IMG/VR virus record: IMGVR_UViG_3300023174_002543
Coordinates: 62,001-126,000 of that record
DNA length: 64,000 bases
Reading direction: 5' to 3' (one strand)
The notes beneath the pieces were generated by a model. It made no database searches, was not told the origin of the DNA, and saw only the letters and a program-made list of their open reading frames with translations. Made by a program: the position numbers and the translations under genes. Below, in pieces: positions 8,334 through 44,155 of the stretch (position 1 is its first letter; every line of letters starts with the position of its first letter).

Positions 8334-8347
8334 ATAAGTATATAAAT
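8334..8347 (+). promoter_or_regulatory. Late promoter-like ATAAGTA / TATAAAT
   Basis: Intergenic ATAAGTA immediately followed by TATAAATG overlapping the start codon. Confidence 0.4.
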
Positions 8348-10232
8348 GGCAATCAAAAATTTTAATGTTGAACATGGCTTATCTGTCAATGATGTAACAA
8401 TCGTAGACAGTAATGCCAATGTTACTGCAAATACTTTAATATCTAATAACATTATTAGTACTAGCGGCACTAATAGTAATATTACCATCAATCCTGATGG
8501 TACCGGTATTATTGATGTAAGCAATAAAAAGATTAGTAATTTAGCTGAACCAATACTTGCAACAGACGCTGCTACAAAGGGTTATGTAGATGCGACTGCT
8601 CAAGGATTGAGTATTAAAAACTCAGTTCAATATGCAACAACTACTAATATTTTATTAGACGGAACAGTAACTACAATAGATGGTAAAACAGTAACTACCG
8701 GAGATCGTGTTCTAGTTAAAGACCAAACAGATAAAAGTAAAAATGGTATATACATAGCAAATACCACAGGTTCATGGACTCGTTCAGCAGATATGAATAT
8801 TGCTACTGAGATTTATGGTGCATTTACATTCGTTGAGACAGGTACTGAAAATCAATCAACTGGATGGGTAACTACTAATTCACCGCTAGATCCATTCACA
8901 TTGAATACAACTGATATAATATGGACACAGTTTAGTGGTACAGGTTCAGATATCAGTACAGATATAAACACGTTACATGTAACAGGTGGTACAAAAGATT
9001 ATGTATTGGCAGCTTCTGATAGTTTAGGTAACGTTGCTTTTGCTAATATTGCAAATTATTTCTTAGTTAAAACTGATATAACTACAGTGGTTGCAGGATC
9101 TACATTGGCCTTTACAATAGACTATGCTAATACTAGCTATCCCGGTGGAATATATACATTACAGCAATTGGGCCCGGTAAGTATGTCAATAAGCGACCAG
9201 TGGTCAATATCAGGTTCTAACGTTGGGACAACAAAAAACGCTTATGCAAATTATGTAGCAACTCAAGTTAATACTGCAAATGTAACAATAGCATTTACGT
9301 TAGCTAATGCTAATTTTAGTTTACAAACAACGGATACATTAACTATTGGTAGCACAGTAATAAATGACAGCAGTTCACCTAATCTAAGAACATTGTTATC
9401 TTCAATAAATGGAGTAAGTTCAGGTACTGTTACTATTCCAGCTACGAGTTTAAATGCAAACATAAACGCTAATGGGTTGAATACGGTAACAAACATAGTA
9501 AGCGTCAACCTTACTAATAGTAGAGGATCAACCGGTGCAGGTGTAAGTACGGCAAGTGGTACGAGTTTAGTGGCGACTGCTCCTACTGCATATAGTGTAA
9601 ACTCTATATCAGGTAGCTTCCCAAGTAGCAGTATACCATATTGGAGTTTAAATCAAACGTTTAACTGGACAGTGAGTACTACGGGCACTACTAGTGCGGG
9701 CAATTTAACATATAGCGGTGGCGCAATAAGCACTACCAGTTTATCAAGTGTGGGTGGCGCAAGCGGAACTAGCGGTAGCATAGATAGCACAAGTAGTTAT
9801 ACTATTACAACTAGTGATTATTATGGATTAGGATTAAATGGATATGGTAATAGAACTATTCCTAGTGCAGTAAATGGTACAGTAAGTGCTGCAACTAAAT
9901 ATTATCCGTTGTTTTGGAAGACAACTTCCAGTAGTGCATTACCAACCATAACAGTTAGTGATAGCCGTAATTCTAATAACTATGCTCTAGGGCAAGGTGC
10001 TACTACATCAACCACTGCTAGTAATTATCTTTGGTTAGCTATACCAAACGCAGGTAATGCTGCACCTTTGGCAAGTCATACCTTTAAGCATGTGTTTGGT
10101 GGATTTGATATTGTTGATACTCCTACGGTAACGGGCACACAATCTATATCTTCAGGCGGACAGAGTTACAATTATTCAATATATGGCTTTAGTGGTTTTA
10201 CGACAGCATCACTTATAATAACAACATCATAA
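8346..10232 (+). CDS. Tail-fibre-like protein with DAATKGYVD stalk, GDRVLVKDQ domain and C-terminal ~380-aa region 'Y'
   Basis: 628 aa; ISNLAEP..TDAATKGYVD and GDRVLVKDQT..KNGIY..WTRSAD are common phage fibre motifs; C-terminal region paralogous to 19408. Confidence 0.65.
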   Translation: MAIKNFNVEHGLSVNDVTIVDSNANVTANTLISNNIISTSGTNSNITINPDGTGIIDVSNKKISNLAEPILATDAATKGYVDATAQGLSIKNSVQYATTTNILLDGTVTTIDGKTVTTGDRVLVKDQTDKSKNGIYIANTTGSWTRSADMNIATEIYGAFTFVETGTENQSTGWVTTNSPLDPFTLNTTDIIWTQFSGTGSDISTDINTLHVTGGTKDYVLAASDSLGNVAFANIANYFLVKTDITTVVAGSTLAFTIDYANTSYPGGIYTLQQLGPVSMSISDQWSISGSNVGTTKNAYANYVATQVNTANVTIAFTLANANFSLQTTDTLTIGSTVINDSSSPNLRTLLSSINGVSSGTVTIPATSLNANINANGLNTVTNIVSVNLTNSRGSTGAGVSTASGTSLVATAPTAYSVNSISGSFPSSSIPYWSLNQTFNWTVSTTGTTSAGNLTYSGGAISTTSLSSVGGASGTSGSIDSTSSYTITTSDYYGLGLNGYGNRTIPSAVNGTVSAATKYYPLFWKTTSSSALPTITVSDSRNSNNYALGQGATTSTTASNYLWLAIPNAGNAAPLASHTFKHVFGGFDIVDTPTVTGTQSISSGGQSYNYSIYGFSGFTTASLIITTS

Positions 10233-10233
10233 T

Positions 10234-12510
10234 ATGGCAGCAGCAACCCTTACCTTCCCCTCACAAACGTTACTTAAGAACGTTGTTGTTCCAGTTGACG
10301 GAACAGATGCTGCTACCAAAGAATATGTAGATGGTAGAACAGGCGCCGGCAGTGTTGCTGCAGCCGGTTCTAATACACATATTCAATTTAATGATGCCGG
10401 TAGTATAGGTGCCAGTGCAAATTTAACTTTTAATAAATCAGGTAATATACTTACTATTACCGGTAACTTAGTATCAAGTAACGCTAATCTTGGTAATCTA
10501 GCAACAGCGAACTATATAAACATTGCAAATAATTTATCAGTCGCCGGCGATGCAAATATTACTGGTAACTTGACAGTACTTGGTACAGTATCCTACATTG
10601 AATCTACTACTACATATGTTACAGATCCTTTATATGAAATAGGCGGAGGTTCGCAGGGTACAACTTTATCAACGGATGATAATAAAGATCGCGGTACTAT
10701 ACTTCACTATTTTGACACTACTCCTATAGACGCTTTTATAGGTTGGGATAATAGTAATGCTGAATTTGCTATTGCGAGTAACGTTTCTGTAACTGATAAT
10801 ATTGTAACTTATAATAATTTTGGTAATATCAGAGTAGGTAATATTTTTGCCGGAAACGTAGTAAATGCTAACTTCTATACCGGTGACGGTGGACTACTTT
10901 CTAATATTATAGCATCTAGTGGTACTGCAACTACAGTCACGGCAAGCACACAACCAAATATTACTAGTCTCGGCAACTTAGTAGAATTGACAGTAGGTCA
11001 AGGATTATCTAATGTATACATTAATGGTTTTGGTAATATTACGGTTGGTAATAAGATAACTACTACCAATTTAACTGTAACCGGTAACTCTATGTTACAA
11101 GGAAATACAGAATTTCAACAAATTGTAACTCTAACATCCTCAGCGAGTAGTACAAATTCTAGCACCGGTGCATTGATATTAACATTAGGTGGTTTAGGTG
11201 TATATGGTAATATACATTCAGGAATGGGAGTCACTGGAGTTACTTTAACTGGTAATATTACTACCGCAAGTCAACCTAATATTACCTCTTTAGGTAATCT
11301 AGTAAGTTTAATAGTAGGAAACTCTACTGCAAATAGTACGTTTGGTAATGGAACTATAACTCTAACAGGTGCAGGTAATATTACAGGTGGTAATCTAGTA
11401 AGTGCTAATTATTTTACCGGCACATTAACAACCTCAAGTCAGCCAAATATAACATCAGTCGGGACGTTAAATAACACAACATTAGGCGCAAGTAACTCAT
11501 TATCAGGTGGTAATCTAGTAAGTGCTAATTATTTTACCGGCACATTAACAACTGCAACTCAACCAAATATTACAAGTTTAGGAACACTAGTAAACGTAAC
11601 GGTGTCCGGTACATCTAATTTAGGAAATGTAGGAAATGTTAGGATTACCGGTGGTAGTTCAGGCCAATACTTAAAAACAGACGGTACTGGAAATTTAAAT
11701 TGGGCTACAGTAGATACATCAAGACTAGCGAACGGTACTACTGAAATAGAGTTATTAGAAGACGGTAATATTAATTTTACCGTAGGAACACAAACAAATT
11801 CAGTTATTTTTGTGGATGATGGTAGTGTTGTTCTTGGTTCAGGTACCGGTGGAAATATCGAAGGTGCCAATGTTGTAAATGCAAATACTTTAGCAGCAAG
11901 TAATACAATAACACGAAATGGAAGAAACGTACCAACATTTGTTAGTTCAGGCACAATGCCAACTAATCCGTTATTAGGTGATGAATGGTACGATCAGGAT
12001 GACGACAGAGTTTATCAATACATCTATGATGGTGCAAATTATAATTGGGTAGAGATAAGCAGTGGTTACATCGCTGCCAATGTAGCTGCTCAAACCGGAA
12101 CATTAGTAGTAAGAGATAGTAATGCCAACGTATATGCCAACACTATACATGCCAATGCTTTAAGCGTTACTGGTACTGCTAAAATGGGTAGTATAGTCAG
12201 CGCAGGAAATGGACAGTCAGTATCTAATTCAACTGAAACTATGATTGATACCTTTCCCAAAACTTTATACAGGTCTGCTAAATACATTATATCAGCAAGA
12301 AATGATGATGGTTTCGAAGTGGCAGAAATGCTACTAATACATGACAATATGATTAGTTTTATACAAACATATGGTGATGTTAGTACTGGGACAGTACAAG
12401 ATATTGTAACTTTTAGTAGCAATATTGTAAGCGGAAACGTCTGTCTATATGCAACAGGGAGTAATTCAAATACATACGTAAATTTAGTATCAACTTATGT
12501 AACTGATTAA
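10234..12510 (+). CDS. Fibre-like structural protein ending in domain X
   Basis: 758 aa; DAATKEYVD, QFN..ASANLTF, DP..DRG module, four QPNIT repeats, GDEWY module, X domain. Confidence 0.65.
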   Translation: MAAATLTFPSQTLLKNVVVPVDGTDAATKEYVDGRTGAGSVAAAGSNTHIQFNDAGSIGASANLTFNKSGNILTITGNLVSSNANLGNLATANYINIANNLSVAGDANITGNLTVLGTVSYIESTTTYVTDPLYEIGGGSQGTTLSTDDNKDRGTILHYFDTTPIDAFIGWDNSNAEFAIASNVSVTDNIVTYNNFGNIRVGNIFAGNVVNANFYTGDGGLLSNIIASSGTATTVTASTQPNITSLGNLVELTVGQGLSNVYINGFGNITVGNKITTTNLTVTGNSMLQGNTEFQQIVTLTSSASSTNSSTGALILTLGGLGVYGNIHSGMGVTGVTLTGNITTASQPNITSLGNLVSLIVGNSTANSTFGNGTITLTGAGNITGGNLVSANYFTGTLTTSSQPNITSVGTLNNTTLGASNSLSGGNLVSANYFTGTLTTATQPNITSLGTLVNVTVSGTSNLGNVGNVRITGGSSGQYLKTDGTGNLNWATVDTSRLANGTTEIELLEDGNINFTVGTQTNSVIFVDDGSVVLGSGTGGNIEGANVVNANTLAASNTITRNGRNVPTFVSSGTMPTNPLLGDEWYDQDDDRVYQYIYDGANYNWVEISSGYIAANVAAQTGTLVVRDSNANVYANTIHANALSVTGTAKMGSIVSAGNGQSVSNSTETMIDTFPKTLYRSAKYIISARNDDGFEVAEMLLIHDNMISFIQTYGDVSTGTVQDIVTFSSNIVSGNVCLYATGSNSNTYVNLVSTYVTD
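11384..11552 (+). repeat. 49-bp perfect direct repeat, 120-bp period
   Basis: CAGGTGGTAATCTAGTAAGTGCTAATTATTTTACCGGCACATTAACAAC at 11384-11432 and 11504-11552. Confidence 0.85.
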
Positions 12511-12542
12511 AATAAAAATAGCAATGGGGATTGTTTGGAACT

Positions 12543-13094
12543 ATGGCTAATAAGTATTTTAACGTAAGACAAGGTCTCCAGACCGGAAATATAACGTTAG
12601 ACGCCACGACGGGAAATGCCAATGTAGGCAATTTGTCCACTACGGACTTGAACGTAGCTGGAAACTTAAATTCGAACCTAATACCTAAGGTCGCATCTGG
12701 CGTACCTTCAGTTCTGTCATTAGGTACCAATCTACAACGATTCAAAGATTTATATCTGTCAGGAAATGTCAATCTTCCTGGTGGACAAACACTCACTGGC
12801 AATACGGATACTGCTAGTTTTTCTGGGAATGTATATACCCCAGGTGCACTAACAGCAAACGTCATAAATGCCAACACTATAGCAGTAAATACAGAATTTA
12901 CGCTAAATAGTACTATAAATTCAACTTCTACTGATACTGGTGCATTTACAACTATGGGCGGAATCGGAGTGAAGAAGGATGTAACAGTGGGGGGTGCTAT
13001 TAATTTAGCCAACTTTGCTGTTACAGGAACAACAGTTAGAAGCAGCATTTACCATGATGATACTTCTAACTCAATAACGTTTAAATTTAATTGA
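12543..13094 (+). CDS. Short fibre-like connector protein ending SITFKFN
   Basis: Track starts at TTG 12531; ATG 12543 gives MANKYFNVRQG, which matches the paralogous N-termini; C-terminus matches that of 14047. Confidence 0.6.
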   Translation: MANKYFNVRQGLQTGNITLDATTGNANVGNLSTTDLNVAGNLNSNLIPKVASGVPSVLSLGTNLQRFKDLYLSGNVNLPGGQTLTGNTDTASFSGNVYTPGALTANVINANTIAVNTEFTLNSTINSTSTDTGAFTTMGGIGVKKDVTVGGAINLANFAVTGTTVRSSIYHDDTSNSITFKFN

Positions 13095-13107: not shown

Positions 13108-14004
13108 ATGGTAGCACCAACAACAATCGGAGCAAGATTATTAAATGATGGTACACTCTACACAGTGGGTACATTTGATGACACCGGCACTACAACAACC
13201 GGACATTCAATCACAAAAGAACATATATTTGCTGATGAATTAGACGAATTAGCACTAAATACCGGTGCCCCATCTGGAGGCTCGGTGTTGCTTAATGGAT
13301 CTAGTCAACGCATAGATGTCACTGGGTCAGAGAGTTTTATGTTTGGCACACAGGACTTCACTATTGAAGGATGGTTCGTATTATCGTCAACTTCATACGC
13401 ACGACTATGGTGTTTCCCAGACGGAGATAACGTAGAAGCCGTAAATGGTACCTTATATTACTGGAATGGTACAGGTAGTGTTTTGACCGCAGGTACGGGA
13501 TCAGCTCCGCAAGGTCGTTGGTTTCATGTAGCACTAGTAAAACGTAACGGTGTAGCAAAAGTATATCTAAACGGTGTAGCAGTAATTACTGATAATAGTC
13601 CATATAATTCAATATCATCAAGACCATTAAGTATTGGCGGTGAAGTAGGTCTTAGTACAGTTGGACAAGATCCAACTGCAGGATCAAGAGACGGTTGGTT
13701 AAATGGCAACGTAACAAATTTTCGTATAGTAAAGGGTCTAGCAGTTTATACAAGTAATTTTAGTACTGCTTATAACCCTCTTACTTCAATACCAAACACA
13801 GTTTTATTACTAAATGTAGTAAATTCTGGTAATTTAGTAACAGATAGTTCGTCACAGAATCAAACTGTTACCAATATTGGCAGTGCGACTTATAGCGCAC
13901 TAACTCCGTTAAGTACATACTTCAACGGCGCAATGAAACAATTGAAAAATGGTGCATTGCTACTAGCAAATGAGTTAGTTGAAACAGACTCAGTATTATC
14001 ATAA
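13108..14004 (+). CDS. Small core protein 'Z' carrying one inserted LamG/concanavalin-A-like domain
   Basis: DFTIEGW, WFHVALVKRNG, VTNFRIVKGLAVYTSNF; N- and C-terminal flanks align with the 76-aa ORF at 19149. Confidence 0.75.
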   Translation: MVAPTTIGARLLNDGTLYTVGTFDDTGTTTTGHSITKEHIFADELDELALNTGAPSGGSVLLNGSSQRIDVTGSESFMFGTQDFTIEGWFVLSSTSYARLWCFPDGDNVEAVNGTLYYWNGTGSVLTAGTGSAPQGRWFHVALVKRNGVAKVYLNGVAVITDNSPYNSISSRPLSIGGEVGLSTVGQDPTAGSRDGWLNGNVTNFRIVKGLAVYTSNFSTAYNPLTSIPNTVLLLNVVNSGNLVTDSSSQNQTVTNIGSATYSALTPLSTYFNGAMKQLKNGALLLANELVETDSVLS

Positions 14005-14046: not shown

Positions 14047-17000
14047 ATGGCAAAATTAAAAAGCGGTACTAGAGTTTATGGTGATGCAACAGTCGACCAA
14101 ACACTAACCGTAGGTAATATAACAATCAGCGGTAACTTAGTAGTTCAAGGACAAACAACGTCTGTAGATAGCACAGTTACTAGAGTAGAAGACCCAATCT
14201 TTGAGATTGGTGGCGGTGAAGCAGGCGCGGCACTTACATCAAATGACGGTAAAGAACGTGGCATATTGATGCATTATTATGATGGCGCCGTAAAAGACGC
14301 TTTCATGGGATGGCATACAAGTAATGCACGTTTTGAATTTGGAGCAATAGCTACTGAATCATCTGGTAACATTACAGTTGGAACATACGGTAATCTTAAA
14401 GCAGGTGTATTCTTTGGTGATGGCGGCGGATTAAGCAATATCGTTGGTGGTAACGTAAGCGGAGACGTAGCAGCTGCAAACTATGCAAACTATGCAGGTA
14501 CAGTAACAGGGTCAGCACAAAGTAATATTACCAGTACTGGTACATTAACAAGTTTAACAGTTAGTGGTACAAGTAATGTTGCGGCTATTAGTTCAAATGG
14601 TGCTATTACTACTAGCGGTAGTATTACTGCAAATGGTGCTAGTTCAAATCTTACAATTGGTACATCAGCAGCAAATAATAGCGTTGCAAACATTTATGGT
14701 GACTTGAATGTTACCGGTAATCTAAATGGTACATTTACTGGTACTATCGGTGCTAAGGGCTCTAACACACACGTTCAGTTCAATGATAATGGTCAACAAA
14801 ACGGTGTTGCTGGATTTACATTCGACAAATCAACTAGCACAGTAAGTATCGCTAATATTGTTTTAGCAGGGGCTGCCGGAACTGCAAACTTTAAGGGTGA
14901 TATTAACTTAACAGGTACAAGTCAGACTATTGCTGGTGCCAACATTAAAGTTGATGCATCAACTCAATTAGAATTAGAAGGCGGAACAGCAAATATTACA
15001 TTGACTAGTTCTAATGTTAAATTAGCAACATCAGGTGGTACTGCTAATTTAGACAACACTGGTAAATTGACTGTATCTGGTGCTGCTGATTTTGCAGGCG
15101 GTAACTTCACAGTCACTACAGCTGGTAATATTGATGCTAAACGCGGTGATTTCACAAGCATCAAAAACACCGGATTAACTGATAATCAACTAGTGTTCAC
15201 TACAGGTAATGTATTGGGTGGTAATGCAGGATTAACATATGCATCTAACACATTAAGTGCTAATAACTTTGCAACTACAAATGCAAATATTACTGGTAAT
15301 ATTACAACTAAGTATAACAGTGGTAAATTATTGACTACTGATGTTGGTGGTAATTTAATTGAATCAAATGTATCATTTTCGTCAAATGAATTAACAGTTG
15401 CTAATGCTAATATAACAAATACTGCAACAATTGCTAATTTAAATATTACTAGTTTAACAACAACAGGTGGATTGTTATTCACTGGCGGTGCTAGCGGTAA
15501 TGTTACCGAGTCAGCAACTTTAACATTCACAGCGATTACTAACACACTATCTACTACTAATATTACTGCTAGTGGAAATGTAGTAGCTAATGCAATAACA
15601 TCTAATAACTTAACTGCTACACAATTAGTATTTGCTGGTGCTAGCAAAGAGTTAACATCTGATTCACACTTAACTTTCACAACAGTTAGTAACACATTAT
15701 CTACTACTAATATTACAGCTAGTGGAAATATTATTGGTGCTAGAGTTACTGCAAACAATGTGGCTGATTCTGAAATCGCATATGCTAACATTGACCATAC
15801 ATTGGTTGGTGCGTCTTCATTCACATATAATGCCGGTACAAGTACTTTATCTGCTCCTAATGTTGTTTCAAGTTCTAGTATAATAGGTGCTAAAGTTTCT
15901 GCAAATAATATTGCCGATACTCAAATCGCATATGCTAACGTTGACCATACTTTAGTAGGTAGTTCATCATTCACATATACTCCACTTACAGGCACATTAG
16001 CAGCTAATAATGTCTCAGTAACTAGTAATGTAACAGCTGCTAATGTATTCGCTAGTACTGTTGGTAATTCAGCTACAATGTTATATGGTAATGGTTATAA
16101 CATTACCGGTGTAGTTGCTAGTTCTGCTAATGCGGAAACACTAACTGGTACATATATCAATGCAGGTGTTACTGGTTCTAGTTTAACTAGTTTAGGTACC
16201 ATGAATAATATCACTATGGGCGGTGCTAATAGCATCAGTGGTGGTAATTTATTAAGTGCTAATTATGTCACAGGTACATTAACAACTGCAGCACAACCTA
16301 ACATTACTAGCTTAGGTAATTTAACTGCTGCAAATGTAACTGGTAATTTACAAGCAGGTGGTATTTTAACTGATAACTTGTACTATGCAAATGGTGGTGT
16401 TTGGGACTTACAACAAGCCGCAGGTGACACTAGTGAGATTCAATTCAACAACGGTGACAACTTTGCCGCAAGTGCTAACTTCACATTTAACTCAGGTTCT
16501 AGTACACTAACTGTAACTGGTACTGGTAATATCACAACGGTAAATGCTACAACAGTAACCGCTACAACTGGTAATATCACAACTGTAAATGCTACAACAG
16601 GTAATATCACAACTGTTAACGGTACAACTGGTAACATTACTACTGTAAATGCTACAACAGTAACAGCTACAACTGGTAATATCACAACTGTAAACACTAC
16701 AGATATTGTTGCATCAGGTAATGCTAATATCACTGGTTGGTTAAAGGCTGCTGATACAGTTATTACTGGTAACTTAACTGTTACAGGTACAACAACAAGT
16801 GTCAATACAACTACATCACAATTAACTGATCCATTACTTGATTTAGGTAACGGTGCAAATGGTGCAGCATTAACAACTAATGATGCATTTGATCGTGGTT
16901 TAGTAATGCATACACGTGTTGCGGGCACAAACAAAGACTTGTTCATGGGTTGGGATACATCTAACGCTGAATTTGTTATGGCTAAAAACGTAACAGTATC

Positions 17001-19137
17001 AGATAACGTTGTTACAGTTCCAGGAACTACTGATGCTGAAAAATTAGCAAACTTGGCTGATTTGCGTTTAGCAAACATTTATGCATACAATGCAAACTTT
17101 GGTGGTGTCGTATTCTCACAAGGTAATGTTACATTAGGTGCTGGATCATTCTTGAACGGTAATGTTAATGGTAATATCAGTGGTACTATTACTGTAACAG
17201 GTGGTAATGGTGCAATTCAATTTGCAAATGCAACCAATGCAATGACATCTAGTTCTAATTTGAATTTCAATGATTCTCTTGCTAGATTAACACTAGGTAA
17301 TGGAACAACTACCGGTGAACTTAAGGCTAATGTAGTAACTGCAAGTTATGTAGCAGGTACATTGACAACTGCAAGTCAGCCAAATGTAACTTCAGTTGGT
17401 ACACTAACAAGTTTAGATGTTACTAATGCAGTAACTGCAGGTTCATTCAAGTCTGACACATATCAGTATGCAAACGGTAGTCCAATCGACTTCCAAACTG
17501 CTGCAGGTAGTGCAACACAGATCCAGTTCAAGTCATCAAGTGGTAACGACTTAGATGCAAGTGCAAACTTAACATTTAATTCATCTACTAGTAACTTAAC
17601 AGTTAATGGTAACATTATTACTGGTGCAGGTTCTGGTGGTAATATCAGTGGTGCTAACGTAGTTAGCGCAACATTGTTCAGTGGTTCTGGTGCTAACTTA
17701 ACAAATATTAACGGTGCAAACGTAAGTGAAGTTGCATTAGCAACTAATGTTACTGCAAGCGCACAAGGTAATATTACTAGCGTTGGTACATTAACTGGAT
17801 TGACAATTGTTGCTAACGGTGACATTACTCTAAGCGGAGTAGACTCAAATATCAGTGGTGCTAATCTAATAAGTGCTGGTTACTTTAGTGGTAATGGTAG
17901 CGCATTGACTGGTGTAACTGCTACGTCAATGAATGCAGCTAATTTGACTGGTTCAACATTGTCAAGCAATGTAACAGGTTCTAGTTTAACTAGTGTTGGT
18001 ACATTAACAAGTTTAACTGTAACTGGTTCTATCACATCATCTACTGGTGACTTAGTTGCAACACTTGGTAATGTAAGTGGTAATGTTATTACAGGTACTA
18101 CATTAACTGGTACATTAAGTACTGCAGCACAACCAAACATTACAAGTGTTGGTACATTAACAAGTTTAACTGTTGCTAATACAGGTGGTTCTGGTAACAT
18201 TACTGCTGATAATGTATTTGCTAATGCAGGTATTGTAAGTGGTCAATACTTATACGGTAATGGTATAAACATCTCTAACATTGCTGGTGCTAACGTAAGT
18301 GGTTATGTACAGAATGCTAATATTGCAAATGTTGCTTACGCAGTGGCTGCAGGTAACATCACAGGTACTACATTGAACAGCAACATTGTAACTTCTAGTT
18401 TAACAACTGTTGGTACATTGGGTAGTTTAAGTGTAACTGCTACTATTACTGCTGGTAATGTACTTGCTAGTAATATTGGTAATGCAACAACAATCTTACG
18501 TGGTGATGGTGCTAATATTACAGGTGTAACAGCTAGTGCAATTGATGCAGGTAATTTAACTGGTCAAACATTATCAAGCAATGTAATTTACAGTAGCTTA
18601 ACATCTGTTGGTACACTAAGTGGACTAACTTCTAACGGTACTGTAAACTTTACTACTGCAAGTAACGTATCATTGGGCCCAGTCGCTAATGTTCATATTA
18701 CAGGCGGTACAACTGGTCAATATCTACAAACTGATGGTTCTGGTACATTAAGTTGGTCAACTGTCTCATTATCAAATATCAATAATGGTACAAGTAATGT
18801 CTCAGTAGCTAACAACGGTAACGTAACTGCCGCAATAGCCGGTAGTAATGTCATCACTATCGCTACAGCTGGATTAACTGTAACAGGTATCATTGAAGCA
18901 ACAGGAAATATTCTTGGTAATAATATTACTAGCAATAATTTCATTACTGCTAATGGTACAACTGCTGCAACAAGTGCAGCAACTGGTGCAATTAAATCAG
19001 AAGGGGGTATATCTGCTAAAGGTAACATCTACACAGGTGATGCATTAGGTTTCGCACATGGTTCTGGTAACACAGATAGTGCTGCATACATCAAATATAA
19101 CGCAACTGCAGGTAGCATAGACTTTATCTTCAATTAA
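14047..19137 (+). CDS. Long repetitive fibre protein (1696 aa)
   Basis: Starts MAKLKSGTRVYG; two DP..DRG modules, several QFN modules and QPNIT-type repeats, pentapeptide repeat; ends SIDFIFN. Confidence 0.7.
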   Translation: MAKLKSGTRVYGDATVDQTLTVGNITISGNLVVQGQTTSVDSTVTRVEDPIFEIGGGEAGAALTSNDGKERGILMHYYDGAVKDAFMGWHTSNARFEFGAIATESSGNITVGTYGNLKAGVFFGDGGGLSNIVGGNVSGDVAAANYANYAGTVTGSAQSNITSTGTLTSLTVSGTSNVAAISSNGAITTSGSITANGASSNLTIGTSAANNSVANIYGDLNVTGNLNGTFTGTIGAKGSNTHVQFNDNGQQNGVAGFTFDKSTSTVSIANIVLAGAAGTANFKGDINLTGTSQTIAGANIKVDASTQLELEGGTANITLTSSNVKLATSGGTANLDNTGKLTVSGAADFAGGNFTVTTAGNIDAKRGDFTSIKNTGLTDNQLVFTTGNVLGGNAGLTYASNTLSANNFATTNANITGNITTKYNSGKLLTTDVGGNLIESNVSFSSNELTVANANITNTATIANLNITSLTTTGGLLFTGGASGNVTESATLTFTAITNTLSTTNITASGNVVANAITSNNLTATQLVFAGASKELTSDSHLTFTTVSNTLSTTNITASGNIIGARVTANNVADSEIAYANIDHTLVGASSFTYNAGTSTLSAPNVVSSSSIIGAKVSANNIADTQIAYANVDHTLVGSSSFTYTPLTGTLAANNVSVTSNVTAANVFASTVGNSATMLYGNGYNITGVVASSANAETLTGTYINAGVTGSSLTSLGTMNNITMGGANSISGGNLLSANYVTGTLTTAAQPNITSLGNLTAANVTGNLQAGGILTDNLYYANGGVWDLQQAAGDTSEIQFNNGDNFAASANFTFNSGSSTLTVTGTGNITTVNATTVTATTGNITTVNATTGNITTVNGTTGNITTVNATTVTATTGNITTVNTTDIVASGNANITGWLKAADTVITGNLTVTGTTTSVNTTTSQLTDPLLDLGNGANGAALTTNDAFDRGLVMHTRVAGTNKDLFMGWDTSNAEFVMAKNVTVSDNVVTVPGTTDAEKLANLADLRLANIYAYNANFGGVVFSQGNVTLGAGSFLNGNVNGNISGTITVTGGNGAIQFANATNAMTSSSNLNFNDSLARLTLGNGTTTGELKANVVTASYVAGTLTTASQPNVTSVGTLTSLDVTNAVTAGSFKSDTYQYANGSPIDFQTAAGSATQIQFKSSSGNDLDASANLTFNSSTSNLTVNGNIITGAGSGGNISGANVVSATLFSGSGANLTNINGANVSEVALATNVTASAQGNITSVGTLTGLTIVANGDITLSGVDSNISGANLISAGYFSGNGSALTGVTATSMNAANLTGSTLSSNVTGSSLTSVGTLTSLTVTGSITSSTGDLVATLGNVSGNVITGTTLTGTLSTAAQPNITSVGTLTSLTVANTGGSGNITADNVFANAGIVSGQYLYGNGINISNIAGANVSGYVQNANIANVAYAVAAGNITGTTLNSNIVTSSLTTVGTLGSLSVTATITAGNVLASNIGNATTILRGDGANITGVTASAIDAGNLTGQTLSSNVIYSSLTSVGTLSGLTSNGTVNFTTASNVSLGPVANVHITGGTTGQYLQTDGSGTLSWSTVSLSNINNGTSNVSVANNGNVTAAIAGSNVITIATAGLTVTGIIEATGNILGNNITSNNFITANGTTAATSAATGAIKSEGGISAKGNIYTGDALGFAHGSGNTDSAAYIKYNATAGSIDFIFN
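16525..16704 (+). repeat. Coding tandem repeat of 12 pentapeptides (GNITT/VNATT/VTATT)
   Basis: Read directly from the translation; 15-nt periodicity in the DNA. Confidence 0.85.
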
Positions 19138-19148
19138 GGAGATAGGTC

Positions 19149-19379
19149 ATGACATCTAATGTTGCGGCTAGACTAGATAGATCCGGAAAGTTCTACACCA
19201 GAGATGGTGTAGTGCTTGACGAGGTTACTCAATCAACTCACGGTATTACGCCAACAAAGGTATATGCAGGTGAGTTGGATGAAGTGACAACTCCGGACAG
19301 TAATAGGGTCATGCAGCAAAAGAAAACGGGTAAACTTATTATTTCAGGAGTTTTTGACGAGGTGTCTGGAATAACATAA
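19149..19379 (+). CDS. Small core protein 'Z' (76 aa) without insert
   Basis: AAGGAG RBS; ARL..SG.FYT..G..LDE and MQQKKTGKLIISG.FDE align with the flanks of 13108. Confidence 0.75.
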   Translation: MTSNVAARLDRSGKFYTRDGVVLDEVTQSTHGITPTKVYAGELDEVTTPDSNRVMQQKKTGKLIISGVFDEVSGIT

Positions 19380-19407: not shown

Positions 19408-21783
19408 ATGGCACTATTAAAATCAGGTACAAGAATATACGGTAACGCTATTATAGACACTAATCTGTCTATTGATGGTACTACCGTATCCTCTGATTAT
19501 CAAACAGGTGCATTAGTAGTTAAGGGCGGGGTTGGCATCGCCGGTAACGTTTTTATTAATGCCAACTTAAACGCTAAAGATACATTAATTACAGGTAATC
19601 TAACAGTTACCGGTACAACCACAACTGTAAATTCAACTACTACCCAATTAGTAGATCCAGTCATTGATATAGGTGGAGGGGCAAATGGTGCTGCACTTAC
19701 TACTAATGACGGATTGGCTAGGGGTCTAGCATTAAATTATTATAACGTTGGTGCAAAGACAGCATTCTTAGGATTTGATAATGCAAATGGGCAATTTGCT
19801 TTTGGTAGTAACGTAAGTAATACTACAGGCACATTGACTATAAACACTTACGGTGATGTAAAAGCAAATAGTTTTGTTGGAAACCTAGTAGGTACTGCTA
19901 ATTTATCTCAAATAGAAGTTAACGGTATATCAAGATTTGGCAACGTGGGTAATGTTAAAATTACCGGCGGCGCTGATGGGTATGTGTTAAGAACAGACGG
20001 ACAAGGTAACTTAACTTGGACAACACCGTCGACTGCTGTTGCAGCTGGATCTAATAATCAAGTACAGTTTAACAACACTAATGCATTTAATGCTAGTGCT
20101 AACTTTACATTCAATAGTTCAACTAAGACATTAACAGTAGATAATATTGTTAGTAACGGTTCCGGGCTAACAAGTTTAACAGGTGCTAATGTAACTGGAT
20201 TTGTACCAAATGCAAATATAGCAAATACTGCATATAATGTTGATGGCGGCAATGTATCAGGGCAAGTAGGTAATGCATTAATAGCCGGTACAGTATATAC
20301 AAACGCACAACCAAATATAACTTCAGTTGGGACACTAAGTTCATTATCAGTTACCGGAAATATAAGTTCAGGTAACGCTACTTTAGGTAACTTAACAACA
20401 AGTAATTATTTTGTTGGTAATGGTAGTTTATTAACTTCAATAACTGGTGCTAATGTAACTGGTCAAGTAGCAAACGCATTAATAGCCGGTACTGTATATA
20501 CAAACGCACAACCAAATATCACAAGTGTCGGTAATCTAAGCAATTTATTTGTAGGTAATGCAACATCAAATGTAGTTATATCAAATGGTAATATAACTAC
20601 CTCAGGAGCATTAAGTGTTGGCGGCAATATTACAGCAAATTATATTACTGCTAACTTAGCATATGCTACTGGTTTAGGTGGTGCAGGTGGCGCAGCCGCA
20701 ACATATGTTACAAGTAACATTACAAGTATTGTGGCAGGTAGTACTATTGCAGTTGTAGCGGATTATGCTAATGCTAGTTATCCAGGTGGTGTATTTACAA
20801 TCGCACAATTGGGTCCGGTAACATTAAGCGCAACAGATGTTTGGACTGGCGGGACATCAACTAAAAATGCATACGCTAATTTTCTTGCAAGTTCAATCAA
20901 TACCAAAGATGTTAATGTTACATTAACATTAGCAAATGCTACATTTGACGTAAAAAGCACAGATAGTATAACGATTGGTGGTAGTAGCGTAACAGGTGCA
21001 AATCTGTTAGCATTGAATATTACTGGTAATGGAACATACACTATACCAAATACATATTTTAGTAGTACTGTTCAAACCACTACTACTAGTGCGGTCAGTA
21101 TAAGTTTAACTACAAGTAGAGGTGTTTATTCTAGTAGCGGAACAACACTTACTGCAACTCAACCAGTAGCATTTACATTAAATGCATTAACAGGTAGTTT
21201 CCCAAGTAGTTCAGTTCCTTACTTTAACTTAAATCAAAGTTTCAATTGGAGTGCTAGTGTAACTGGGACAGTAAGTTCTGGTAACATTACTTATAGCGGT
21301 GGCGCAATAAGTCCAACAAGTTTAACTGGTGCAGGTGCAACTAGTGGAAGTAGTGGAAGCATTGACAGTACATATAGTTATACTATAACATCCAGTGACT
21401 ATTATGGTGCTGGATTATATGGTTATGGTTCTAGAACAATACCAAGTACAGTAAATGGTACTGTAACTGCAGCAACAAAATACTATCCAGTATTCTATAA
21501 AATAACAAATAATTCAACTATACCAACGTTGACTACTAGCGATAGTTATCTAACACGTAACTATGCAATAGGTGATGGTGCAACAACTAGCGCAACAACT
21601 AGTCAATATTTATGGATAGCAATTCCAGGCACAAGTAGTCATACTTTTGCTTATACATTCTTAGGCAGTCAAGTTGGTCAAGATCCAGCAGTGACTGGCA
21701 GTCAAACAATTTCTGGATATTCTTATAATATCTATGGGTTCACGAATTTCTCTGTGGCCACTGCTTTATATACGGTGACATAA
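19408..21783 (+). CDS. Fibre-like protein with C-terminal region Y
   Basis: 791 aa; starts MALLKSGTRIYG; C-terminal ~355 aa paralogous to 8346 (YPGG..T..QLGPV, FPSSS.PY..LNQ.FNW, TKYYP.F.K, Y.IYGF). Confidence 0.65.
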   Translation: MALLKSGTRIYGNAIIDTNLSIDGTTVSSDYQTGALVVKGGVGIAGNVFINANLNAKDTLITGNLTVTGTTTTVNSTTTQLVDPVIDIGGGANGAALTTNDGLARGLALNYYNVGAKTAFLGFDNANGQFAFGSNVSNTTGTLTINTYGDVKANSFVGNLVGTANLSQIEVNGISRFGNVGNVKITGGADGYVLRTDGQGNLTWTTPSTAVAAGSNNQVQFNNTNAFNASANFTFNSSTKTLTVDNIVSNGSGLTSLTGANVTGFVPNANIANTAYNVDGGNVSGQVGNALIAGTVYTNAQPNITSVGTLSSLSVTGNISSGNATLGNLTTSNYFVGNGSLLTSITGANVTGQVANALIAGTVYTNAQPNITSVGNLSNLFVGNATSNVVISNGNITTSGALSVGGNITANYITANLAYATGLGGAGGAAATYVTSNITSIVAGSTIAVVADYANASYPGGVFTIAQLGPVTLSATDVWTGGTSTKNAYANFLASSINTKDVNVTLTLANATFDVKSTDSITIGGSSVTGANLLALNITGNGTYTIPNTYFSSTVQTTTTSAVSISLTTSRGVYSSSGTTLTATQPVAFTLNALTGSFPSSSVPYFNLNQSFNWSASVTGTVSSGNITYSGGAISPTSLTGAGATSGSSGSIDSTYSYTITSSDYYGAGLYGYGSRTIPSTVNGTVTAATKYYPVFYKITNNSTIPTLTTSDSYLTRNYAIGDGATTSATTSQYLWIAIPGTSSHTFAYTFLGSQVGQDPAVTGSQTISGYSYNIYGFTNFSVATALYTVT

Positions 21784-21784
21784 T

Positions 21785-22714
21785 ATGGCATTAATATTCC
21801 CCGCACCAGCCCAGATTAAGAACTTATTAGCGCCGACTGATAATACTGATGCCGCAACCAAATTATATGTTGATAATCAAGTAAGTGGAGCAACTGTCAG
21901 TGTATCAGGTAGTAATACACAATTACAATTTAACAACGCCGGTTCTTTTGGTGCAAGTAGTAATTTAACATTTAATAGTTCAACTAATCTATTAACAGTT
22001 ACTGGTAATATTGCAACCAGTAATTTATCAGTAACAGGTAATGTGTCATTTACTGGTGCAAATGTAAGTTTAGGTAATATAAGTAATCTACGTATAAGTG
22101 GTGGTACTGCTGATTATGTTCTAAAAACAGATGGAACAGGCAATCTAAGTTGGACTGCACAAAGCGTAGGAACATTAACTGCTGACGTAGATGCATTTAC
22201 TGGTGATGGAAGCAATGTTGCATTCACATTAGCAAATACACCTGCAGGTGAAAACTTCACAATGGTTGCCGTACAAGGTGTACTACAGCCTAAAACAACT
22301 TATTCATTAAGTGGTAATGTATTAACATTTACTAGCGCACCCCCAAGCACAGCAGTAGTTGAAGTCACTACGTTTGGTGGCTCTGTTATGTCAGGTGGCG
22401 GTGGCGGCGGAACTAGTCCTGCGTTAACTTGGAACATTGCAAGTAGTAATGCAACAATGACTGCAAACAATGGATACTTTGTAGACACATCAAGTGGTGC
22501 AAAAACAATGACATTACCAACTAGTGCAACGTTAGGTGATACTATTCGTATCAATGACTTGGCTGGATCTTTCTCTACAAACAACTTAACAGTAGCAAGA
22601 AATGGTCATAAGATTCAGGGTATTGCACAAGATTTATTAGTAGATGTAGAACAAAGTAGTTTTGGTTTAGTATACAGTAACAGCACATATGGCTGGAAAG
22701 TATTGGAGTTATAA
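21785..22714 (+). CDS. Fibre protein with FTGDG domain and a C-terminal domain resembling T4 gp34 N-terminal repeats
   Basis: DAATKLYVD; VDAFTGDGSNVAFTL; GYFVDTSSGAKTMTLPT..LGDTIRIND..GSFSTNNLTVARNGHKIQG..GW. Confidence 0.6.
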   Translation: MALIFPAPAQIKNLLAPTDNTDAATKLYVDNQVSGATVSVSGSNTQLQFNNAGSFGASSNLTFNSSTNLLTVTGNIATSNLSVTGNVSFTGANVSLGNISNLRISGGTADYVLKTDGTGNLSWTAQSVGTLTADVDAFTGDGSNVAFTLANTPAGENFTMVAVQGVLQPKTTYSLSGNVLTFTSAPPSTAVVEVTTFGGSVMSGGGGGGTSPALTWNIASSNATMTANNGYFVDTSSGAKTMTLPTSATLGDTIRINDLAGSFSTNNLTVARNGHKIQGIAQDLLVDVEQSSFGLVYSNSTYGWKVLEL

Positions 22715-23964
22715 TGGCAACAAATTTAAAATCAGTTAAAGCATCTGCTCTTACTTCTGTTATAACTAGTGTTGCAAGCCCTGGTGTAAAGATAACTGGG
22801 TTAACATATCCAAGTGGTGCCAGTGCAGGAAATCCAGCAGGTGGCGAAACAATTACTGTTAATGGTAGTGGATTTAATACCGGTGCAATAGTGTATATTG
22901 ATACTACAAATTGCTCAACTACATATGTTAGTGCAACAAGTTTAACATTTACAAGTCCTGCTAAAAGCATAGCAAGTTATCATTTATTCGTTTACAATAC
23001 TGATGGTAGTTCAGGCATGTTGCCGGCGGGTATGATTTATAGCGCAATGCCAATATGGGTTACTAGTAGCGGATCATTGGGAATGGCTAGTATTGGATAT
23101 AGTTTTTCATCTACAGTGAGTGCTACCGGTGACGGTACAGTTACATACAGTTTAACTAGTGGTTCACTACCAACCGGCTTAAGTTTGAATACTAGTAGTG
23201 GTGTAATTTCAGGAACGACTGGTGGATCGGCATCAACCTTCAATTTTGTAATTTCTGCTACAGACAGTCAAAATCAAGTTACTACTAGAAGTTTTAGTAT
23301 AGAAACAAGTACTGGATCTGAATTACTCACCCCACCTAACAAAACTAAATTGTTAGGTTTACAATTTAATAGTAGTGGATTAACTGTTACTGGTTCTTGG
23401 ACAGTTACTACATATGGCTCATTGTCATATCAAACAACCGGTGGCGTAAGAAATACAGGCTATGCGACAGGATGGAGTACAACTAATTACCTAACAATAA
23501 ATCAAATAAATAATGCTACCGCCTCTACTATGAGAGATAAAACATACATGGCTTGGTATAAAGGCACACAAACTGCTGCTAAACCAACCGGAAATTATTC
23601 TCCGTCAGTTCCTATTTTTGCTGAACTAACTGGTTCAGTTTATTGGGGACTTGGCATAGATGACGGCAAAATAGCTGTATCTAATGGAGGTCAAAATAAA
23701 GGATCTACTTCAATTAATACCGGTAGTTGGTTTTTCTTAGCATGGGTAGTGAAATCAAATTCTGATGTTGACGCATATGTTAATGGTGTTAAAGAACTAA
23801 CAAATATTGCAGTAAACAATAGTTATCCGGGTACTAAGTATATAGGAAACGGATATAATTACGGGCCAATGGAAAATCCTACTGCATTAGACGCTATTCA
23901 AATAATAGATGGGGAGTTAACCGGTGCTGAGATACTTTCTATATATACACAAGGTACACAATGA
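22714..23964 (+). CDS. IPT/TIG + Ig-like + divergent LamG adhesin-like protein
   Basis: GGETITVNGSGF, YSLTSGSLPTGLSLNTSSGVISGT, WFFLAWVVK..YVNG; TAATG overlap with the upstream gene. Confidence 0.65.
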   Translation: MATNLKSVKASALTSVITSVASPGVKITGLTYPSGASAGNPAGGETITVNGSGFNTGAIVYIDTTNCSTTYVSATSLTFTSPAKSIASYHLFVYNTDGSSGMLPAGMIYSAMPIWVTSSGSLGMASIGYSFSSTVSATGDGTVTYSLTSGSLPTGLSLNTSSGVISGTTGGSASTFNFVISATDSQNQVTTRSFSIETSTGSELLTPPNKTKLLGLQFNSSGLTVTGSWTVTTYGSLSYQTTGGVRNTGYATGWSTTNYLTINQINNATASTMRDKTYMAWYKGTQTAAKPTGNYSPSVPIFAELTGSVYWGLGIDDGKIAVSNGGQNKGSTSINTGSWFFLAWVVKSNSDVDAYVNGVKELTNIAVNNSYPGTKYIGNGYNYGPMENPTALDAIQIIDGELTGAEILSIYTQGTQ

Positions 23965-44150: not shown

Positions 44151-44155
44151 TAACA

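What the first reader, a model, noticed from the sequence alone, without database searches (positions are those of the whole stretch)
13108..14004. A whole LamG domain inserted into a 76-aa protein, with the empty version in the same genome
Seen: removing ~13258-13920 from the 298-aa ORF leaves ARLLNDGTLYT..FDD..HSIT..IFADELDEL + AMKQLKNGALLLANELVE. This aligns with the 76-aa ORF at 19149 (ARLDRSGKFYT..LDE..HGIT..VYAGELDEV + VMQQKKTGKLIISGVFDEV). Both sit in the same junction context. This is a natural with/without pair showing that the couplers can display an optional lectin side branch.
Basis: seen in the sequence. Interest (0 to 1): 0.7.

Follow-up and report, generated by a model that had tools for sequence, protein, structure and literature searches.

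The report
Three-clamp fibre-joint adaptor carrying a lectin
A freshwater jumbo phage has two related small proteins, one of 76 residues and one with a whole sugar-binding LamG domain looped into it, and they belong to an undescribed family of adaptors predicted to clamp the tail end of one fibre protein and to hang optional cargo at the joint before the next fibre.

Summary
With the LamG domain (aa 56-269) removed, the 298-aa ORF aligns end to end with the 76-aa ORF: z = 12.4 against shuffles, and family profiles give E 7e-19 for the N part and 2.8e-10 for the C part.

Both proteins belong to conserved families with no Pfam, PHROG, NCBIfam or PDB match. The shared ~75-aa module is three short units, each ending in FDEVT. 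Units 1 and 3 are homologous.

In relatives the module occurs:
- alone;
- at the N- or C-terminus of cargo proteins (LamG, Gly-rich, FN3+BNR, glucanase-like beta-helix);
- split by cargo between units 2|3 (as here), between units 1|2, or at both places.

Every module gene follows a fibre gene whose product ends in a conserved tail (...S-I/L-D-F/T-x-F). Nearly every one precedes a fibre gene starting MA-K/L-L..GT..YG. This genome has exactly two such triads, in series.

A complex prediction puts one 76-aa module on a trimer of the upstream fibre's tail, one unit per tail. The score was 0.75 against a best control of 0.01. A predicted contact pair also co-varies across 58 cassettes.

The two window genes are old paralogues, not a recent insertion. 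Contact with the downstream fibre is inferred only from gene order.

The parts
12543..13094 (+). Upstream fibre-like protein of cassette 1 (listed as 187 aa from TTG 12531; relatives start at the ATG at 12543). Its last ~55 aa, about nt 12920-13091, are the conserved C-terminal tail domain ('socket'), ending SITFKFN here.
   Evidence: It aligns with the C-terminus of the 1696-aa fibre and with 19 other tails (A4). It is one of only two such tails in the 367-kb genome.
13108..14004 (+). 298-aa protein: the three-unit module with a LamG domain nested between unit 2 and unit 3.
   Evidence: About 196 homologous clusters of 285-323 aa keep both flanks.
13126..13251 (+). Units 1 and 2 of the module in the 298-aa protein (aa 7-26 and aa 33-48, each ending in D-D/E).
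   Evidence: hhalign N part E 7e-19 against the 76-aa family. Invariant A9 R10 L11 G15 T16 L17 D24 A42 D46 E47.
13273..13914 (+). Nested LamG (Laminin_G_3, concanavalin-A-like) beta-sandwich, aa 56-269.
   Evidence: Pfam E 2.2e-10. pLDDT mostly above 90. Foldseek matches to pentraxin and laminin-G domains, probability 1.0, TM by target 0.6-0.69.
13924..13986 (+). Unit 3 of the module in the 298-aa protein (aa 273-293).
   Evidence: hhalign C part E 2.8e-10 against the 76-aa family. Invariant N273 G274 K277 Q278 K280 G282 L284 E289 E292.
14047..19137 (+). 1696-aa fibre protein. Its N-terminal peptide MAKLKSGTRVYG ('plug', nt 14047-14082) belongs to cassette 1. Its C-terminal tail domain ('socket', about nt 18964-19134, ending SIDFIFN) belongs to cassette 2.
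   Evidence: The last 89 aa were used as a trimer in the complex prediction.
19149..19379 (+). 76-aa stand-alone module. Unit 1 is aa 5-27 (nt 19161-19229) and unit 2 is aa 31-47 (nt 19239-19289). The variable linker aa 48-52 (nt 19290-19304) is the equivalent of the cargo site. Unit 3 is aa 53-76 (nt 19305-19376).
   Evidence: 62 homologous clusters of 76-79 aa at 49-100% identity. Units defined. Predicted to bind the tail trimer through aa 2-11, 30-39 and 50-59.
19408..21783 (+). 791-aa fibre protein whose N-terminus MALLKSGTRIYG is the 'plug' of cassette 2 (nt 19408-19443).

Best explanation
The 76-aa protein and the flanks of the 298-aa protein are paralogous copies of an undescribed ~75-aa adaptor module. 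The module is three short beta-hairpin-like units, each ending in F-D-E-V-T, and units 1 and 3 are duplicates of each other. One module chain sits on the extreme C-terminal end of a trimeric fibre protein, the product of the gene directly upstream. The first strand of each unit pairs with the last ~9 residues (S-I/L-D-F/T-x-F-x) of one of the three fibre chains. A single polypeptide therefore caps a threefold fibre end. The linkers between units and both termini point away from that interface, so whole domains can be carried there. In the 298-aa protein a LamG lectin domain is looped out between units 2 and 3. In relatives the cargo is LamG, a glycine-rich domain, FN3+BNR, a glucanase-like beta-helix or unnamed beta domains, at any of the four positions. 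The capped end then most likely serves as the docking platform for the conserved N-terminal peptide of the fibre encoded directly downstream. On that reading this phage builds a serial chain: 187-aa protein / LamG adaptor / 1696-aa fibre / bare adaptor / 791-aa fibre, with a sugar-binding side branch at the first joint. Shown directly: the homology, the nesting, the repeat structure, the gene triads and the architectures. Predicted in silico with one independent check: the 1:3 clamp on the tail. Inferred only: virion location, docking of the downstream fibre and glycan binding by the LamG.
For: Both are conserved gene families, and synteny is conserved in relatives at ~53-59% identity. The repeat structure is unit 1 against unit 3 at hhalign E 4e-12, with unit 2 sharing only the FDEVT end. 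An exhaustive profile search found 191 representatives. Of 145 classified, the module is alone in 30, N-terminal in 48, C-terminal in 42, split 2|3 in about 24 and internal in 1. Splits at 1|2 and unit-cargo-unit-cargo-unit proteins are. Gene triads: in the module-anchored sample the upstream protein ends in the tail in ~26-27 of 28 cases, and the downstream protein starts with the peptide in ~24 of 27. All 24 tails and all 24 peptides in those loci flank a module gene. The whole genome has exactly 2 tails, 2 modules and 2 peptides, in series. In an independent peptide-anchored scan, all 46 complete module ORFs with upstream DNA follow a tail-bearing protein. Complex prediction, three tail fragments plus one module: score 0.75, best of 3 controls 0.01. 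That mark was reached by 58 of 80 solved complexes and 2 of 110 mismatched pairs. The runs agree in at least 86% of contacts and the partner's pLDDT is at least 72, against 46 as a monomer. The interface is tail residues 81-89 of all three copies with module aa 2-11, 30-39 and 50-59. No solved relative exists, so the pass is not from memory. Covariation: tail position 86 (F or T) against the residue before the unit-1 Arg (position 7), a top predicted contact. F goes with Ala in 18 of 19 cassettes and T with Ser/Thr in 32 of 39; Fisher p ~3e-10, not corrected for relatedness.
Against: No experiment supports any of this, and the phage is uncultured. The complex score comes from a predictor run with my own unpaired alignments and a 3:1 stoichiometry that lies outside its calibration. 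Only one stoichiometry and one partner could be tried. The conserved FDEVT ends are not in the predicted interface, so their role is unexplained. The downstream N-terminal peptide is not exclusive to modules. In 26 of 115 peptide-anchored loci it follows a ~1000-aa virion protein ending SWTEAQA, with no module present, so it may dock elsewhere. No protein fuses the module to either the tail or the peptide. The covariation table contains related sequences, perhaps only 4-6 independent lineages on the F side. The window's own cassette-1 tail has T where relatives have the conserved D (SITFKFN). Monomer models of the module are unreliable.
Confidence: 0.6

Rival explanations
1. Cap or cargo anchor only. 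The module clamps the distal end of the upstream fibre and presents LamG or other cargo there. It does not connect to the next fibre, which attaches to the particle independently. The gene order then reflects only tandem fibre genes.
For: Only the tail interaction has in-silico support. The N-terminal peptide also occurs directly after a ~1000-aa SWTEAQA virion protein with no module, so it has another docking partner. Adhesins that sit on fibre tips and are encoded just downstream of the fibre gene are known (gp38 of T2/S16-type phages, PMC6957217, PMC3157838).
Against: In module-anchored loci the next gene starts with this particular peptide in ~24 of 27 cases, rather than with any of the other fibre N-terminus types present in the same genomes. 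A cargo-less 76-aa cap is conserved across the clade, which suggests a structural role of its own. The genome holds equal numbers (2:2:2) of the three elements, in series.
Confidence: 0.25
2. Assembly chaperone. The module transiently holds the three C-terminal tails of the upstream fibre together to start trimerisation, like tail fibre assembly proteins. It is not a stable virion component.
For: The module gene lies 9-13 nt downstream of the fibre gene in all loci. It is predicted to bind the three C-terminal tails. T4 gp38 and gp57A and Tfa-type proteins act on fibre C-termini (PMC3004832).
Against: Many family members carry large receptor-binding or glycan-degrading cargo: LamG, FN3+BNR, a glucanase-like beta-helix, and 800-2000-aa beta-helix proteins. 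That makes sense only if the protein stays on the particle. There is no match to any tail-fibre-assembly family in Pfam, PHROGs or NCBIfam.
Confidence: 0.1
3. Recent domain insertion or deletion within this genome: the 298-aa gene is the 76-aa gene that lately acquired LamG, or the 76-aa gene lately lost it.
For: The same genome holds both forms and the flanks align collinearly.
Against: Flank identity is only about 31-33%. Both forms are separately conserved, with the same synteny, in relatives down to ~53% identity. On the module tree the 76-aa family is a separate clade (SH-aLRT 98). The LamG-split family is an 8-row clade (99) nested among other architectures. No with/without polymorphism appears in metagenome contigs.
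Confidence: 0.03
4. Chance resemblance of low-complexity fibre sequence, with no real relationship between the two ORFs.
For: The proteins are short and the fibre genes are rich in N, T, S and G.
Against: z = 12.4 against shuffles. Profile E-values are 7e-19 and 2.8e-10. Invariant residues are shared across 191 representatives.
Confidence: 0.01

Closest known systems
T4 long-tail-fibre knee proteins gp35 (monomer) and gp36, between gp34 and gp37 (PMC3004832, PMC5537660)
   Same: Small proteins encoded between the genes of two serial trimeric fibre segments. gp35 is a single chain at a joint between trimers. Gene order follows assembly order.
   Different: There is no sequence similarity: no PHROG or Pfam hit and no tblastn hit in 50,697 phage records. 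gp35 has 372 aa and binds the N-terminal side (gp36). Here the module has ~75 aa, is built of three repeats and is predicted to clamp the C-terminal tails of the upstream fibre. It also carries interchangeable cargo.
PAAR-repeat proteins on VgrG/gp5 spikes (PMC8651086)
   Same: A single small chain with internal repeats that caps a threefold trimer end. It occurs bare or extended by many different cargo domains.
   Different: No PAAR motif and no Pfam hit. The partner is a fibre's C-terminal tail, not a beta-helical spike tip. The cargo here is glycan-binding or glycan-degrading domains, and it can be nested between the repeats as well as terminal. The resemblance is one of logic only.
Branched receptor-binding-protein systems: anchor/branching domain plus conserved docking peptide (KP32-type, RaK2/phiKp24 hyperbranched fibres; PMC6872550, PMC13352976, PMC9700779, PMC10253068)
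   Same: Multi-protein fibre trees in which a short conserved N-terminal peptide of one fibre docks on another protein. This phage's major capsid protein is 65-68% identical to that of a group of cultured jumbo myoviruses (Vibrio phage 2.275.O, PA5oct, E. coli jumbo phages). From my own knowledge I place that group near the RaK2-type phages.
   Different: No T4 gp10-like branching domain was detected. The joint is made by a separate three-unit protein. The module, tail and peptide were not found in cultured phage records.
Tip adhesins and tail fibre assembly proteins encoded downstream of fibre genes (gp38 of S16/T2-type phages, Tfa; PMC6957217, PMC3157838)
   Same: Encoded directly after the fibre gene. 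They bind the fibre's C-terminal end and can carry the receptor-binding function.
   Different: No homology. Here another fibre gene with a dedicated N-terminal peptide nearly always follows, and the cargo-free form is conserved.
LamG / Laminin_G_3 domains of cyanophage and other phage structural proteins
   Same: The nested domain is an ordinary member (Pfam above threshold; 28-34% identity to cyanophage virion proteins).
   Different: It is nested inside another small module rather than arrayed in tandem, as it is in the window's 1604-aa and 8159-aa LamG proteins.

Membership tests
Laminin_G_3 / concanavalin-A-like LamG (PF13385) | Profile match above the curated gathering score | tested here: met
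   E 2.2e-10, 41.3 bits against a cutoff of 27.6, aa 64-189
Laminin_G_3 / concanavalin-A-like LamG (PF13385) | Two-sheet jelly-roll beta-sandwich fold | tested here: met
   Model aa 56-269 has pLDDT mostly above 90. Foldseek matches pentraxin and laminin-G domains, probability 1.0, TM by target 0.6-0.69
Laminin_G_3 / concanavalin-A-like LamG (PF13385) | Calcium or carbohydrate-binding site on the sandwich rim | not tested
   Residue-level comparison was not done. Ligand unknown
Three-unit FDEVT adaptor module (family defined here) | Three units in order, each ending in (F/L)-D-E-(V/I)-(T/S), with R-L..G in units 1 and 3 | tested here: met
   Both window proteins match the profile: E 5.6e-29 for the 76-aa protein and E 2.4e-12 for the 298-aa protein in two pieces. 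Alignments A1-A3
Three-unit FDEVT adaptor module (family defined here) | Gene lies between a fibre gene ending in the S-I/L-D-F/T-x-F tail and a fibre gene starting MA-K/L/R-L..G...YG | tested here: met
   Both window genes. The cassette-1 tail is a variant, SITFKFN
PAAR-repeat cap proteins (PF05488) | PAAR motifs / profile match | tested here: not met
   No Pfam family at E <= 0.1 for the 76-aa protein
PAAR-repeat cap proteins (PF05488) | Single chain with pseudo-threefold repeats capping a trimer | tested here: inconclusive
   Three units, with units 1 and 3 homologous. The predicted 1:3 complex has one unit per chain. This is a prediction only, and the partner is of a different kind
T4 gp35/gp36-type fibre knee proteins | Sequence homology to gp35 or gp36 | tested here: not met
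   No PHROG hit. No tblastn match in phage records at E <= 0.1
T4 gp35/gp36-type fibre knee proteins | Located physically between two fibre segments in the virion | not testable with these tools
   Only gene order and a predicted contact with the upstream segment are available
Tail fibre assembly / chaperone proteins (Tfa, gp38-like) | Profile match to a known assembly-protein family | tested here: not met
   No hit in Pfam, PHROGs or NCBIfam
Tail fibre assembly / chaperone proteins (Tfa, gp38-like) | Encoded directly downstream of the fibre gene and binds its C-terminal end | tested here: met
   Gap of 11-13 nt after the fibre stop codon. Predicted binding to the last nine residues; in silico only
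Branching-domain / docking-peptide RBP systems (T4 gp10-like) | T4 gp10-like branching domain in the primary fibre | tested here: not met
   No such Pfam hit in the 187-, 1696- or 791-aa proteins. NCBIfam, run on the 187- and 791-aa proteins only, gave none either

The most novel reading that the evidence does not exclude
The tail, module and N-terminal peptide form a portable, self-contained joint system. A single-chain three-clamp adaptor resolves the step from a trimer to one chain at a fibre end. It lets phages chain fibre segments in series and hang up to three or four arbitrary glycan-binding or glycan-degrading domains at each joint. The cargo-free and LamG-bearing forms in this genome are two states of that system. 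If true, it is a new, widespread building principle of phage host-recognition organs (>120 viral contigs for the peptide, 191 protein-cluster representatives for the module), and a ready-made scaffold for displaying domains on fibres.
Probability: 0.4. Interest if true: 0.8.

Novelty: new variant of a known kind. Interest (0 to 1): 0.68.

Why it matters
Phage host range is set by fibres, and how multi-segment and branched fibres are joined is known for only a few model phages. This is a sequence-defined joint element found in hundreds of uncultured, mostly freshwater phages. It has a concrete, testable binding model: one chain, three clamps, three fibre tails. It also shows natural evidence that whole domains are tolerated at four positions. 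That gives structural biologists a small target (76 aa plus an ~90-aa fibre fragment) to solve. It gives annotators a rule for recognising fibre joints and side-branch lectins or enzymes in metagenomic phages. It is also a clean natural example of domain nesting between repeat units.

Tried and rejected
(1) The downstream fibre's N-terminal peptide as a fourth copy of the module unit, which would make the module a single-chain mimic of a trimeric N-terminus. hhalign gave E 0.04-0.1. Unit-HMM scores were only ~2 SD above shuffles, and single shuffles scored higher. Rejected as unsupported.

(2) The fibre's C-terminal tail as homologous to the units. hhalign gave E 0.35-0.72. Rejected.

(3) Monomer structure comparison of the 76-aa protein with the flanks. 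Both were modelled at pLDDT below 50, so no superposition was possible.

(4) The search for related loci with the diverse module alignment failed because no stretch was conserved enough. I replaced it with two degenerate DNA pattern scans. In the first, about 50 of 68 hits were chance matches and were filtered out with the profile.

(5) Cultured phage records: no module and no N-terminal peptide. Only LamG and a generic fibre domain were found there.

(6) Fusions of the module with the tail or the peptide (a Rosetta-stone test): none among 150 representatives.

(7) ESM Atlas look-alikes gave only unnamed viral clusters below the informative score.

(8) My first tail regex was too strict. It called 15 loci 'no tail', and inspection showed variant tails (SLDTVF-A/L/V/E) in all 15.

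(9) The complex with the downstream fibre, and the LamG paralogue with the 187-aa protein, could not be run because only one complex job was allowed.

Full report
**What is there.** The window is bases 62,001-126,000 of a 367-kb IMG/VR virus record. Near-identical DNA occurs in lake and freshwater metagenomes of at least two studies. The window encodes a head protease, a T4-type major head protein and a very long run of fibre-like genes. The major head protein is 65-68% identical to those of Vibrio phage 2.275.O, Pseudomonas phage PA5oct and E. coli jumbo phages. This is therefore an uncultured freshwater relative of that jumbo-myovirus group.

**Checking the observation.**
- Pfam Laminin_G_3 matches aa 64-189 of the 298-aa protein above the curated cutoff.
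- An AlphaFold model built from 24 homologues gives a confident beta-sandwich for aa 56-269 and disordered-looking flanks. The sandwich matches pentraxin and laminin-G structures.
- BLASTP of the two ORFs gives E 1e-5 for the N flank and 0.021 for the C flank.
- With aa 51-271 removed, the 77 remaining residues align globally with the 76-aa protein. There are 25 identities, and the score is 79 against 13.6 +/- 5.3 for 2000 shuffles.
- Both proteins are conserved families. There are 62 clusters of 76-79 aa and about 196 clusters of 285-323 aa that keep both flanks.
- Profile-profile comparison of the families gives E 2.5e-13 overall, 7e-19 for N against N and 2.8e-10 for C against C.
- Contigs of two runs from different studies carry the LamG gene in one piece without joints. 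Either sample may be the window's source. A third study holds a 99% variant across the LamG/unit-3 boundary.

**What the small protein is.** A diverse alignment shows three units, each ending in F-D-E-V-T:
- unit 1: R-L-x-x-T-G-x-L-x-x-x-G-x-FDEVT;
- unit 2: S-x-x-x-x-T-x-T-x-x-Y-A-x-x-FDEVT;
- unit 3: V-A-x-R-x-x-x-x-G-x-L-x-V-S-G-x-FDEVTGI.

Units 1 and 3 are homologous (hhalign E 4e-12). Unit 2 shares only the FDEVT end. Nothing in Pfam, PHROGs, NCBIfam, PDB sequences or the ESM Atlas names this module.

**Survey of relatives.** An exhaustive profile search of 1.84 billion representatives found 191 proteins at E <= 1e-3. Of 145 that could be classified:
- the module stands alone in 30;
- it is N-terminal in 48;
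- it is at the extreme C-terminus of 180-2026-aa proteins in 42;
- it is split between units 2 and 3 in about 24;
- it is internal in 1.

N-terminal modules precede LamG, Gly_rich_2, FN3+BNR or an alpha-1,3-glucanase-like beta-helix. Cargo at the 2|3 site includes LamG, LamG+Gly_rich_2 (P0292) and at least four unnamed beta domains (P0189, P0193/L007, P0209, P0265). Viral contigs add proteins split between units 1 and 2 (L009, L057). They also add proteins of the form unit-cargo-unit-cargo-unit(-cargo), such as L027, which has a LamG after each unit, and L077, L098, L146, L151 and L170. The window's 298-aa protein is thus one state of a family in which any inter-unit linker or terminus can carry a domain.

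**Age of the pair.** On a tree of 145 modules the 76-aa family is a separate clade (SH-aLRT 98). The window's LamG-split family is an 8-row clade (99) nested among other architectures. The split state needs at least two changes on strongly supported branches and 15 on the best tree, though the alignment has only 73 columns. Relatives at 53-59% identity already have both genes in the same places. The two genes are old paralogues, not a recent indel.

**Genomic context.** In every locus with enough flank, the gene directly upstream of a module gene ends in a conserved ~55-aa domain. Its tail reads ...Y..YN....S-I/L-D-F/T-x-F-x (alignment A4). The gene directly downstream starts MA-K/L/R-L..G-T/S..YG.
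- In the module-anchored sample this holds for ~26-27 of 28 upstream genes and ~24 of 27 downstream genes. In both exceptions I inspected (L009, L057) a different gene directly follows the module gene. In L057 a gene with the conserved N-terminal peptide lies about 900 nt further downstream; for L009 none was identified.
- All 24 tails and all 24 peptides in those loci flank a module gene.
- The whole 367-kb genome has exactly two tails, two modules and two peptides. They are arranged in series: 187-aa protein (tail) / 298-aa LamG module / 1696-aa fibre (peptide ... tail) / 76-aa module / 791-aa fibre (peptide).
Of 115 peptides, 68 follow a module gene and 26 follow a ~1000-aa virion protein ending SWTEAQA, a homologue of window ORF 45475-48510. 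Three follow a unit-3-like end, 12 are cut by the locus edge, 2 are other cases and 4 lie at the edge.
- In that sample all 46 complete module ORFs with upstream DNA follow a tail-bearing protein: 31 by pattern and 15 with variant last residues.

The tail-module link is therefore obligatory in these data. The module-peptide link is strong in one direction only.

**Mechanism.** The single complex prediction allowed used three copies of the last 89 aa of the 1696-aa fibre and one copy of the 76-aa protein.
- The score was 0.75 (runs 0.70, 0.76, 0.75) and the best of 3 controls was 0.01.
- That mark was reached by 58 of 80 solved complexes and by 2 of 110 mismatched pairs.
- The runs agree in at least 86% of contacts, and the partner's pLDDT is at least 72, against 46 alone.
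- Those counts hold only roughly here, because my own alignments and a 3:1 assembly were used.
- The interface is the last nine residues of all three fibre copies against module aa 2-11 (first strand of unit 1), 30-39 (unit 2) and 50-59 (unit 3). That is one unit per chain.
- The best-defined pairs are F86-A7, D85-R8, I84-L9 and S83-D10, with the equivalent set on unit 3. D85 and R8 are each nearly invariant in their families.

An independent check supports the interface. Across 58 distinct cassettes, tail position 86 co-varies with the residue before the unit-1 Arg. F goes with Ala in 18 of 19 cassettes and T goes with Ser/Thr in 32 of 39. Fisher p is ~3e-10, not corrected for relatedness.

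No solved structure resembles either partner, so the pass is not recall of a known complex. The cargo sites (both linkers and both termini) and the FDEVT ends lie outside the predicted interface. This fits cargo pointing outward and leaves a conserved surface free. I infer, but did not test, that this free surface receives the next fibre's N-terminal peptides.

**Comparison with known systems.** In logic the module resembles T4 gp35, a monomer at the knee between trimeric half-fibres, encoded between their genes (PMC3004832). It also resembles PAAR proteins, small repeat-built single chains that cap a trimer and carry many cargo types (PMC8651086). It is homologous to neither. It differs from branching-domain/docking-peptide systems of Klebsiella phages (PMC6872550, PMC13352976, PMC9700779) because the joint is a separate three-unit protein. 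It differs from tip adhesins and chaperones (PMC6957217) because another dedicated fibre gene follows and the cargo-free form is conserved.

**Verdict.**
- The nested LamG is an ordinary LamG.
- What is new is the adaptor family and its tail/module/peptide cassette.
- My confidence is about 0.97 for homology and nesting, about 0.7 for the three-clamp cap on the upstream fibre, and about 0.5 for a true coupler.

Noticed in passing
window 8346-10232 / 10234-12510 and 19408-21783 / 21785-22714: A second, module-free type of fibre-gene junction occurs twice. The upstream protein ends ...YGF(S/T)xF...T(S/T). The next gene starts 1-2 nt later with MA..(L/I)(T/I)FP...KN...P.D.TDAATK.YVD. The same pairing recurs in relatives (L003, L004, L028, L058, L065).
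   Followed up: partly
window 51931 to beyond 64000 (genome 113931-138407): A giant open frame of 8159 aa starts here and runs off the window. Its first 1000 aa already hold four Laminin_G_3 domains. That is why no ORF over 90 aa is listed after 51918.
   Followed up: partly
window 45475-48510: A 1011-aa virion structural protein (phrog_5838) ending SWTEAQA. In 26 smaller viral contigs its homologue is followed, 7 nt later, by a fibre gene with the same MAKL..GTRIYG N-terminus that follows module genes. It may be the other docking partner of that peptide. In this window it is followed by a different 189-aa gene.
   Followed up: partly
window 31680-36494 and 22714-23964: A 1604-aa protein has TIG-like/He_PIG domains followed by six Laminin_G_3 domains. 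A 416-aa protein has TIG + He_PIG and a LamG-like C-terminus. LamG is the dominant decoration of this fibre locus.
   Followed up: partly
window 23961-24851, 30513-31664, 40140-41087, 44111-45034: Four glycine-rich proteins. Two match Pfam Gly_rich_2 and two are below threshold. Three of them are preceded by small ORFs of ~109-123 aa with no family (30139-30510, 39811-40140, 41919-42281). The first and third of these small ORFs are clear paralogues.
   Followed up: partly
window 42281-43426: A 381-aa protein made of repeats (...TFTKL.NP.TLP...) that match WD40 and lactonase-type beta-propellers, sitting among the fibre genes.
   Followed up: no
window 12531-13094: The mechanical ORF starts at TTG 12531, but relatives begin at the Met of MANKYFNV (ATG 12543). 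Its tail reads SITFKFN, where all relatives have the otherwise nearly invariant Asp (SIDFKFN).
   Followed up: partly
window 12413-13048(-), 15186-15824(-), 16440-17078(-) and others: Long antisense open frames (up to 212 aa in the window, 1980 aa genome-wide) lie inside the fibre genes. They are most likely by-products of the N/T/S/G-rich codon composition, not genes.
   Followed up: no
loci L005, L068 and proteins P0196, P0239, P0255, P0270: Proteins of 860-2026 aa that start MA.(Y/R)YWVGG.G.W......NW carry the module at their extreme C-terminus. They sit between a tail-bearing fibre gene and a peptide-bearing fibre gene. They have no Pfam family, and their repetitive sequence looks beta-helix-like to me. 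They are the largest cargo seen on the module.
   Followed up: partly
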